From positions 33,420,331 through 33,484,179 of the forward strand of contig NC_058133.1 of NCBI RefSeq assembly GCF_016433145.1: a stretch of 63,849 nucleotides of DNA. Reading direction: 5' to 3'. How positions within the stretch are numbered: position 1 is the stretch's first letter; each line of letters opens with the position of its first letter. This document shows positions 15,802 through 18,800 of the stretch, piece after piece. A program made the position numbers and the translations under genes. The notes beneath the pieces were generated by a model. The model had not been told where the DNA came from. It saw nothing but the letters and a program-made list of their open reading frames with translations, and did not search any database. The stretch comes from Gracilinanus agilis (Eukaryota).

Positions 15802-18800
15802 TCATTTGCTCCGCAGCAGGCGAGAGTGCCGGTGCACAGCCTCCACGAAGGCTCCAACATGAGCAGGATCCATATCCGGGTAGAGCCCGTGGCCAAGGTT
15901 GGCAATATGCCGCTGGGGCCCGAAGGCAGCCAGCATCTGCTCCACCACTCGCCCAATCTCCTCCTGCAGGATGAGGAGGGAAAGGCATGGAGCTCTCAGA
16001 GGTGGGAGGGCAGGGCAAGGGGAGGAAGGGGGACCAGGGTGGCACATACCACAGTCAGACCCTGAGGCGGGCACATGTGCACTGCTCCCTACCTCCCCGA
16101 CCTTAGAGGCAGAGGGCACAGGGGTCCAGTGTTCCCGTGGGCCCCAGATAAACCCCACTCCCCATTTCTCCTACCTTGGAGGCGTAGAGGGCACAGGGGT
16201 CCAGATTGCCCTGGAGGGTCACAGTCTTTCCCACACGTTCCCTGAAACCAGTCAACCAGGATCACCAAAGCCTGTTCCTGAGGGTCCTCCTTCCTCATCC
16301 CCCCCAAAACCAAATAGACCCTCACCCTCACCCCCTAACAAATCCATCATACCAGGGAACCTCCCACGGATAGATTTACATATAGGGAAACTGAGGCAAA
16401 AGGGGCAATGACTCATTGAAGATCATCCCATCAGTCAGAGGCAGAGCCGAGCCTTGAACCCCTCCCTGAGCCAGGCCCTGGTGACTGAGGTTAAGGCTGC
16501 TTCTACTCACCGGGCCAGGGCAGGGTTCACCTTCCAGTCAATTCCAACCACTTCGTACCCAGACTTGGCCAACGCTTCCAAGGCGTAGTGTGCATCCTTA
16601 GCAAAGATGATCTGGGCAGGGGACAGGGGGCAGGGGTGAAATCCCTTGACTCCTGCTGGCCTAGGAGTTTTGACTTTGACTCTCCCCTGGCTCCATCCAG
16701 TCAAACCCACATGGGTCAAGTCATAGGACCCCAGACCCTTTCTCTCTTTTGCTATCACCCCAAAAGCACTTTGAGACTTAAATCCTTTCCCCACAACAGC
16801 CCTGGGAGGTCAAAAGTAAAGGGACTCACACCCCCATTTAACAAAGGGGGAAAAATGAGACCTGGAGAAGGGGTGAGATGTGGCCAAGTTTGATGCCCCA
16901 CTCTCCTGGGAGCCTTACCAAGGGCACTGGCTCCAGGCCCGCCTCCTGAAGCCCAACCTTGACCCTCTTGGCCACATCACGGATGTAGGGCAGCGCGAAC
17001 TCCGAGAAGAGTTCAGGACCCAGGTGCCCAGCATGAGACTCAAACAGCTGCAGGGCCTGCGGGAAGAGGAGCAGGTGGGTGAGGCCAAGGGTCAGAGGTC
17101 AGAAGCTAAGATCAGGCCAGGCTGTCCCCAGAAGGCCCACCTTCCCAGCCCCTCACCTGGGCCCCTGCGGCCACCTGGCCCACAAGGTAGGGGACGAGGA
17201 CGTCAGTCAGGAGACCCAGCAGGCGGTGGCTGGCCTCGGGCCACTGGTACAGCCAGCGCTTGGCCTGGGCCATGGTGTTCGAGCCGCCCCCCTCTACCAT
17301 GTAGGACATCAGTGTCCACGGGGCCCCGGCAAAGCCAATGAGAGGTACCCGCCCAGCCAGCTGGTGACGGGTCAGGGTGATGGCCTGGAACACGTAGCCC
17401 AGCTCCTTGTCCACATCCACAGGGGCCTGGAGGCGGTCCAGGTCCTGCTCTTCCCTTAAGGGTGATGAGAAGCTCGGCCCTTTGCCGGGCACCATAGCTA
17501 CCTGCATGCCCATAGCCTGTGGGGAGGTGGGGAGCTGAGCCTGAGGGCCAGGCCAAGAGGCCCCAAGCCCCCAGAGCCCCCCATCATACCTGGGGCACCA
17601 CCAGGATGTCAGAGAAGATGATGGCAGCATCGAGGGGGAAGCGTCGAAGAGGCTGTTGGGGCAACACTGGGGTGTGAGTGTCTCTGTGCCCAGGCCAGGG
17701 CGCAGAGACATCCCAGGACCAGGACCCATCTTCTCAAAGTAGCAGGCATAAGGGACAAAGCCCTGGCCCCAGAATCAAGAGGACTGACCCTCACATCTAG
17801 GAGCAGAAAGACCTTGGACTCTGGGGCTCAGGTTTTTTCTCTATAAAATGGGCACAATACGATGGGTGCTCCCTTGCTCCTTGGCCTCCCTCCCAGATGT
17901 GCCCAGCTCCCAGTGGTCTTGCTGGGCAGGCCTTGGAATAGGGTAGCAGCTGCCTAGGGGTACAGGAGTGGGATTTGGGGCTGTGCCCCAGCTCTTATAG
18001 GACTGGTTGTTGTCTCTGCTGGGGCTGCAGAGCCAAGCGGGCACCTTCAGGGTCATTGCCTGGCCTTCTAGGGCATCTGAGGGATCTGGGTAGGGGGGAA
18101 GGAGGCTGGGCTGGGTTGGGGGCATTGCCAGAGGCCTGTGTGGGGCCTGCCCTCACCTGCAGGGTCAGTTCGCAGCAGGTCTCTGGAGAGCGACAGGTGA
18201 TGAAGAAGTCCTGGCCAGCCCGGGTCTCCTGGAACTCTGGGTGGGGGAGGGGACGGGATGTAAAGGTGGGAAGCAGAGGAGAAGGAGAAGAGAGGGTGTC
18301 CTGCCCCTCCCTCTGCCCCTTCCTTCCACCTCCCAGGCCTCTCACCTTTCAGGTATCGGCCTGCCTGGCGCATGCACCACACAGGTGTATAGTCCGTGGC
18401 CTCCCCCCAGGCTGCCCGCAGAAAAGTGTCATTTTGCAGCTTGGGGAAGGTCTGGTGGCGGTCCCCACCTGGGCTAGGATCAGGACTCTGGCTATTGCTC
18501 CTGGGGCTACTGTGGCTGCTGCTGGGCGGAGAGAAGGAGAGCCCCACCTCCCTTATCAGTCTAAGCCAGGCTCTGTTCCAGCCCCCACCTCATCCCCAAC
18601 CCAGCCCTGTCTCCCATCCCCACCCCAGCCCCCTCCCGCCAGGCCGGTCTTCAGGAGCCCCCTACACCCCACCAACTGCCGAGATGGAAGGGGGAAGGGG
18701 CTCAGAGCCTGAGAAGAGGGTTCCGGCAGGTAGGAAGATAGGTAGAGCCCCGAATACCGAGATCAGAACATGAGAGAGGGGGGACTGGGGGAGGAGGACA

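What the first reader, a model, noticed from the sequence alone, without database searches (positions are those of the whole stretch)
17157..17516. Precise loss of UROD intron 5
Seen: a single 360-nt exon reads ...[12 protein letters not shown]... without interruption (ccg|tgg at about 17319/17318). Known (recalled): human UROD has 10 exons with an intron exactly here, separating exons of 198 and 162 nt, which sum to 360; the other internal exons here match the recalled human sizes. Exact intron loss is rare in mammals and usually attributed to recombination with cDNA. Inference: a lineage-specific loss and a useful phylogenetic marker.
Basis: partly seen in the sequence, partly recalled or inferred. 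Interest (0 to 1): 0.75.

Follow-up and report, generated by a model that had tools for sequence, protein, structure and literature searches.

The report
Marsupial UROD gene lost intron 5
The haem-synthesis gene UROD in this opossum has cleanly lost one small intron, but four marsupial orders share the loss while platypus, deer, alligator and fish keep the intron, so it is an old marsupial-wide change of a familiar kind.

Summary
On the minus strand, 17516..17157 is one 360-nt exon with AG/GT borders. It reads ...[12 protein letters not shown]... across 17319/17318, and two spliced mRNA contigs of the same organism use it unbroken.

The window encodes exactly the RefSeq UROD proteins of Gracilinanus agilis, in 9 coding exons. 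Platypus, muntjac, alligator and milkfish have 10 coding exons. In all four, a phase-0 GT..AG intron (97, 102, 589 and 626 nt) splits 198 + 162 nt at this codon boundary.

Koala, Dromiciops and Antechinus lack the intron in the same way. So does a genomic contig of a second, related organism.

The loss is therefore real and exact, and it is not a placental gain. It most likely happened once on the marsupial stem lineage, so it is not opossum-specific. As a marker it supports only marsupial monophyly, which nobody disputes.

The mechanism is inferred. A reverse-transcribed mRNA copy recombining with the gene is the most likely route. The gene is ubiquitously expressed, the intron is about 100 nt in platypus and muntjac, and the junctions share only 1 nt of microhomology.

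I found no paper that reports this case. The 9-exon models are already in public annotation. Interest is low to moderate.

The parts
18956..18975 (-). UROD coding part of exon 1 (ATG plus 17 nt)
   Evidence: Exact spliced alignment of P0322 and P0325 to the window. An mRNA joint links 18518 to 18956 in X2 and X3.
18346..18521 (-). UROD exon 2, 176 nt, or 173 nt from the tandem acceptor at 18518. It is 60 nt longer at its 5' end than in the non-marsupial species.
   Evidence: The mRNA contigs use 18518.
18157..18236 (-). UROD exon 3 (80 nt)
17590..17652 (-). UROD exon 4 (63 nt)
17157..17516 (-). Fused exon, equal to ancestral exons 5 and 6 (198 + 162 = 360 nt)
17318..17319 (-). Site of the lost phase-0 intron (ccg|tgg, Pro|Trp)
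   Evidence: Junction table of 8 species. tblastn shows the intron in platypus and muntjac and none in koala.
16919..17056 (-). UROD exon equal to ancestral exon 7 (138 nt)
16511..16611 (-). UROD exon equal to ancestral exon 8 (101 nt)
16175..16241 (-). UROD exon equal to ancestral exon 9 (67 nt)
15802..15963 (-). UROD last coding exon with the stop codon (162 nt)

Best explanation
The window holds the single, expressed, orthologous UROD gene (uroporphyrinogen decarboxylase, fifth enzyme of haem synthesis) of the agile gracile opossum. Its ancestral intron 5 has been deleted exactly, to the base, fusing exons of 198 and 162 nt into one 360-nt exon; this much is shown. The other eight introns keep their ancestral positions and phases. 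Four marsupial orders share the state and monotreme, placental, reptile and fish keep the intron, so by parsimony the deletion happened once on the marsupial stem lineage, after the split from placentals and before living marsupials diverged. The mechanism is inferred, at about 55-60%: a reverse-transcribed copy of spliced UROD mRNA in the germ line recombined with the gene over a short tract and erased this one small intron. The enzyme sequence is unchanged at the junction, so no functional effect is expected beyond one splicing step fewer. The confidence given is for the pattern (a real, exact, marsupial-wide loss), not for the mechanism.
For: Exon borders and reading frame are, and the Pfam URO-D match is. 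Database proteins XP_044529108.1 and XP_044529107.1 (P0322, P0325, Gracilinanus agilis) splice-align exactly to the window in 9 exons. Koala, Dromiciops and Antechinus have 9 coding exons with the fused 360-nt exon. Platypus, muntjac, alligator and milkfish have 10 coding exons, with 198 + 162 nt split by a gt..ag phase-0 intron of 97, 102, 589 and 626 nt. The other coding exon sizes (80, 63, 138, 101, 67) and all other intron phases are identical across the 8 species. mRNA contigs of organism A (X2, X3) show eight GT..AG joints that fit the model and none inside the fused exon. A genomic contig of organism B (X5, about 91% alike, introns included) crosses the exon with a net surplus of only 50 letters over 1375 nt, too little for an intron of about 100 nt. 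The locus is colinear with the three marsupial loci through introns and flanks. For the mechanism: the deletion is exact, the intron is about 100 nt in the two mammalian outgroups, and human UROD is listed as ubiquitously expressed (PMC8391404 Table 3). Housekeeping genes lose introns more often in rodents, in line with the reverse-transcriptase model (PMC3652778). Only 1 nt of microhomology is shared by the two junctions.
Against: Independent DNA support therefore comes from other species, not from a second individual. DNA could not be fetched for Monodelphis, wombat or bilby, and no shrew opossum (Paucituberculata) was sampled. The reverse-transcriptase model predicts a bias to 3' introns and frequent joint loss of neighbours. 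Here a single central intron (5 of 9) is gone and introns 4 and 6 remain, so the pattern is only compatible with the model. After some 80 million years or more, no trace of a conversion tract can be expected.
Confidence: 0.88

Rival explanations
1. The same exact loss came about by a genomic deletion or by double-strand-break repair without any RNA intermediate. Selection then kept only a deletion that left this highly conserved [10 protein letters not shown] stretch untouched.
For: Only one intron is missing and both neighbours are kept, which a local deletion explains as simply as a short conversion tract does. [quoted passage not shown]
Against: In platypus and muntjac the two junctions share only 1 nt of microhomology (G before each junction, nothing after). 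A base-exact deletion without a guide is improbable in itself.
Confidence: 0.3
2. The intron was lost several times independently in different marsupial orders, because a short intron of about 100 nt in a housekeeping gene is a hotspot. There was no single loss on the stem.
For: [quoted passage not shown]
Against: All four marsupial orders sampled, plus organism B, show the same state with no exception. One event explains this where the rival needs two to four.
Confidence: 0.05
3. The fused exon is an artefact: an assembly error, cDNA contamination, or a partly processed duplicate mistaken for the parent gene.
Against: Eight other introns are present in the same gene. Four other assemblies from different species and a genomic contig of organism B show the same structure. 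The mRNA contigs match with no mismatches. Flanks and introns are colinear with the other marsupials. RefSeq lists this as the UROD gene of the species.
Confidence: 0.01
4. The intron is a gain in placentals, or in the other lineages, and marsupials keep the ancestral intron-free state.
For: None was found.
Against: Platypus, alligator and milkfish carry the intron at the identical codon boundary and phase. A gain account would need four independent insertions at one site.
Confidence: 0.005

Closest known systems
Exact intron losses catalogued in mammals (Coulombe-Huntington and Majewski 2007, as cited in PMC7605268 and PMC3652778; Churakov et al. 2020, PMC7605268: 87 verified cases)
   Same: The deletion is base-exact and fuses two exons in frame. 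The gene is ubiquitously expressed, the other introns are kept, and the state is shared by related species.
   Different: The event lies on the marsupial stem lineage, which those surveys barely covered. In Churakov et al. the opossum served as one of the target genomes whose introns were screened for loss elsewhere. I could not see their supplementary table, so I cannot say whether UROD is listed.
Ten-exon UROD gene of human and other vertebrates
   Same: It is the same enzyme (Pfam PF01208). The coding exon sizes 80, 63, 138, 101 and 67 and all shared intron phases are the same. Human UROD is listed with 10 exons (PMC8391404).
   Different: Marsupials have 9 coding exons: intron 5 is absent, and exon 2 is 45-63 nt longer at its 5' end.
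Loss of the UBL5 minor intron in this same genome
   Same: It is another exact intron loss in the same opossum genome, also attributed to a reverse-transcribed RNA copy.
   Different: That case concerns one of two gene copies and a U12-type intron. This one is a U2-type GT..AG intron in a single-copy gene and is shared by four marsupial orders. I did not re-test that note.

Membership tests
Exact spliceosomal intron loss | The intron is present at the homologous position and phase in outgroups | tested here: met
   Platypus 97 nt, muntjac 102 nt, alligator 589 nt and milkfish 626 nt, all gt..ag, phase 0, between ...GAP and WTLM....
Exact spliceosomal intron loss | The flanking exons are fused in frame with no base gained or lost | tested here: met
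   198 + 162 = 360 nt. The protein alignment has no gap at the junction.
Exact spliceosomal intron loss | The locus is orthologous and not a retrocopy: other introns are retained and the flanks are colinear | tested here: met
   Eight other introns sit at the ancestral positions. blastn shows colinearity with koala, Dromiciops and Antechinus through introns and flanks.
Exact spliceosomal intron loss | The intron is absent in at least two related species, to exclude assembly error (criterion of PMC7605268) | tested here: met
   Four assemblies besides the window, plus a genomic contig of organism B.
Reverse-transcriptase (mRNA-mediated) intron loss | The gene is expressed in the germ line or is a housekeeping gene | not testable with these tools
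   Human UROD is listed as ubiquitous (PMC8391404), and organism A has mRNA contigs. Germline expression in the marsupial ancestor cannot be tested.
Reverse-transcriptase (mRNA-mediated) intron loss | Bias towards 3' introns, or joint loss of adjacent introns | tested here: not met
   A single central intron (5 of 9) is lost, and introns 4 and 6 are kept. This lowers the claim but does not exclude a short conversion tract.
Reverse-transcriptase (mRNA-mediated) intron loss | Processed pseudogenes of the same gene are present in the genome | not tested
No tool here searches the whole marsupial genome.
Microhomology-mediated intron loss | A short direct repeat spans both splice junctions | tested here: inconclusive
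   Only 1 nt is shared in platypus and muntjac, but the ancestral marsupial intron itself is unknown.
URO-D family (PF01208), vertebrate UROD orthologue | Match to the family profile and identity to the annotated UROD of the species | tested here: met
   Pfam E 7e-44 for the fused exon. P0322 and P0325 splice-align exactly.

The most novel reading that the evidence does not exclude
Loss of UROD intron 5, together with the 5' extension of exon 2, is a pair of clean, homoplasy-free structural changes that arose once on the marsupial stem lineage. They would be unreported rare genomic changes that diagnose Marsupialia, and a datable example of a single-intron, mRNA-mediated loss outside placentals.
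Probability: 0.6. Interest if true: 0.3.

Novelty: new member of a known kind. Interest (0 to 1): 0.25.

Why it matters
It adds one well-documented case to the short list of exact intron losses in mammals, on a branch (the marsupial stem) that genome-wide surveys have hardly covered. The intron is short in platypus and muntjac and the gene is ubiquitously expressed, in line with the excess of intron loss in housekeeping genes reported for rodents (PMC3652778). It does not help with opossum phylogeny, it does not change the enzyme, and the 9-exon gene models are already in public annotation. Its value is that of a tidy textbook example.

Tried and rejected
- **Exon-only protein search:** it returned only fragments, because of the length window. 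I repeated it with the stop-free frame 17774-17115 and region 87-206, which gave the full-length vertebrate UROD proteins.
- **Loci not obtained:** The look-up of encoding contigs found no record for the shorter isoforms P0121 and P0122. It gave no DNA for Monodelphis, wombat or bilby because the files were too large.
- **Run X1:** Only short repeat matches appeared, so there is no second DNA witness from organism A.
- **Synteny with alligator:** tblastx of the alligator's neighbouring HECT-domain gene fragment against the window found nothing. Synteny rests on the marsupial flanks only.
- **Literature:** no relevant paper combines UROD with intron loss. The supplement of PMC7605268 is not held, nor is PMC1716263. 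The '10 exons' hit in PMC3986552 concerned FLVCR2, not UROD.
- **Explanations rejected:** assembly or cDNA artefact, partly processed duplicate, and placental gain (see the rival explanations).
- **Human sequence:** no human contig or protein was fetched or compared. P0151 and the large primate cluster P0160 were left alone.

Full report
**The observation.** Read on the minus strand, the window shows a polypyrimidine tract and AG before 17516, and GT after 17157. The 360 nt in between are open and read ...[20 protein letters not shown].... The 120 codons match Pfam URO-D (PF01208) positions 80-200 with E 7e-44.

**Gene and organism.** Earlier notes on this genome call it the agile gracile opossum. 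I tested this. A word search with the stop-free frame around the exon found vertebrate UROD proteins. A second search and a cluster look-up returned the RefSeq UROD isoforms of Gracilinanus agilis, XP_044529108.1 and XP_044529107.1 (P0322, P0325).

An exact spliced alignment written in a script puts both proteins on the window residue for residue, in 9 coding exons. On the minus strand these are:
- 18975-18956
- 18521 or 18518 to 18346
- 18236-18157
- 17652-17590
- 17516-17157
- 17056-16919
- 16611-16511
- 16241-16175
- 15963-15802

The sizes are 20, 176/173, 80, 63, 360, 138, 101, 67 and 162 nt.

**Comparison of gene structures.** I fetched the genomic loci of annotated UROD proteins from seven other species and splice-aligned each protein exactly to its own locus.

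| Species | Coding exons | Region of exons 5 and 6 | Intron 5 |
|---|---|---|---|
| Platypus | 10 | 198 + 162 nt | 97 nt |
| Muntjac | 10 | 198 + 162 nt | 102 nt |
| Alligator | 10 | 198 + 162 nt | 589 nt |
| Milkfish | 10 | 198 + 162 nt | 626 nt |
| Koala | 9 | fused, 360 nt | none |
| Dromiciops | 9 | fused, 360 nt | none |
| Antechinus | 9 | fused, 360 nt | none |
| Window (Gracilinanus) | 9 | fused, 360 nt | none |

- In the four outgroups the full size series is 20 or 23, 113, 80, 63, 198, 162, 138, 101, 67, 162 or 165 nt. Intron 5 is gt..ag, phase 0, and lies exactly between the Pro codon of GFAGAP and the Trp codon of WTLM.
- The longest koala isoform starts the fused exon 18 nt earlier, giving 378 nt.
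- All other intron positions and phases are identical in the eight species.
- A plain tblastn of the window's exon shows the same picture: one unbroken hit in koala, and a hit interrupted at AP|WT in platypus and muntjac.

**Independent data.** Of the runs that hold the stretch, X2 and X3, from the same organism and study as the best holder, contain spliced mRNA contigs of 1241 and 1295 nt. These match the window without a single difference. They show eight joints, all CT..AC on the plus strand (GT..AG on the gene's strand), at exactly the modelled borders, and they run through 17157-17516 unbroken. The gene is therefore expressed and spliced as a 9-exon gene.

Run X5 comes from a second organism. 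It holds a genomic contig of 1939 nt, about 91% alike and including introns. One of its pieces covers 16873-18247 with a net surplus of 50 letters and 58 gap letters in all. An intron of about 100 nt inside the exon cannot be hidden in that.

I therefore have no second DNA witness from the same species.

The loci of koala, Dromiciops and Antechinus are colinear with the window through exons, introns and flanks. The gene compared is thus the orthologue and not a partly processed duplicate.

**What it is.** The intron is ancestral to bony vertebrates and was still present in the common ancestor of mammals. It is missing in Didelphimorphia, Microbiotheria, Dasyuromorphia and Diprotodontia. One exact deletion on the marsupial stem lineage explains everything.

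By general knowledge of mammalian divergence times, not tested here, this places the event roughly between 160 and 80 million years ago.

**How it most likely happened.** This part is inferred.
- *For the mRNA route:* the standard account is that a reverse-transcribed copy of spliced mRNA recombines with the gene (reviewed in PMC3652778 and PMC7605268). Three things fit here. The deletion is exact. The intron is short in both mammalian outgroups (97 and 102 nt). The gene is ubiquitously expressed (PMC8391404 Table 3). Housekeeping genes lose introns more often than other genes in rodents (PMC3652778).
- *Against it:* only one central intron is gone and both neighbours stay, whereas the model in its simple form predicts 3' bias and joint losses.
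- *The alternative:* deletion guided by microhomology finds little support, since the two junctions share a single G in platypus and muntjac. The true ancestral marsupial intron is unknown, however.
- *My odds:* about 55-60% for the mRNA route, about 30% for a DNA-level deletion, and the rest unknown.

**Consequences.** The protein is unchanged at the junction. The only expected effect is one splicing step fewer and an internal exon of 360 nt, which is long but within the normal range.

**Novelty.** Exact intron loss in mammals is rare but well described. Churakov et al. 2020 report 87 verified cases, 52 of them found earlier by Coulombe-Huntington and Majewski. No relevant paper in the library combines UROD with intron loss. 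I could not read the supplementary tables of the surveys. The 9-exon models are already in RefSeq for at least ten marsupial species. I file it as a new member of a known kind, of low to moderate interest.

**Limits and rules observed.**
- I fetched and compared no human sequence. The human 10-exon structure is taken from a review table, and the 198/162 split from the muntjac.
- I sent no protein joined by me from the window's exons to any search tool. The searches used single-exon references, and the exact database proteins stood in for the spliced model.
- The N stretches of the window (25756-25954, 27214, 30782-30829) were left alone.

Noticed in passing
window 18346-18521 (-), and L002, L004, L005 exon 2: Marsupial UROD exon 2 is 158-176 nt, against 113 nt in platypus, muntjac, alligator and milkfish. 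The acceptor lies 45-63 nt further upstream and adds a poorly conserved Ser/Pro-rich stretch of 15-21 residues just after the first six residues (proteins of 382-388 aa against 367-369). The mRNA contigs X2 and X3 confirm the joint 18518 to 18956. This is a second structural change on the marsupial stem. Its effect on the enzyme is unknown.
   Followed up: partly
window 18518/18521 (-): A tandem (NAGNAG-type) acceptor at exon 2 gives the two RefSeq isoforms, which differ by one Ser (176 against 173 nt). The mRNA contigs laid use 18518.
   Followed up: partly
L002 3444-3461 (koala): The longest koala isoform starts the fused exon 18 nt upstream (378 nt instead of 360), through an alternative acceptor in intron 4.
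   Followed up: no
window 16386-16426 and 17818-17860; also about 25 places that match L002 780-1000: There are short high-copy repeat fragments inside UROD introns (word depth up to 1848 in X1 and 237 in X5). A repeat of about 100 nt shared with the koala flank occurs some 25 times across the window, for example at 2356-2462, 2600-2706 and 55932-56039. It is probably a SINE family.
   Followed up: no
Petaurus breviceps proteins P0121, P0314, P0315: Sugar glider UROD is annotated as 'UROD-like', with each protein carrying two accessions on two contigs. This could be a duplicate locus or two haplotype scaffolds. I did not examine it.
   Followed up: no
window 25756-25954, 27214, 30782-30829: Runs of N (199, 1 and 48 letters) lie in the GC-rich stretch upstream of UROD.
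   Followed up: no
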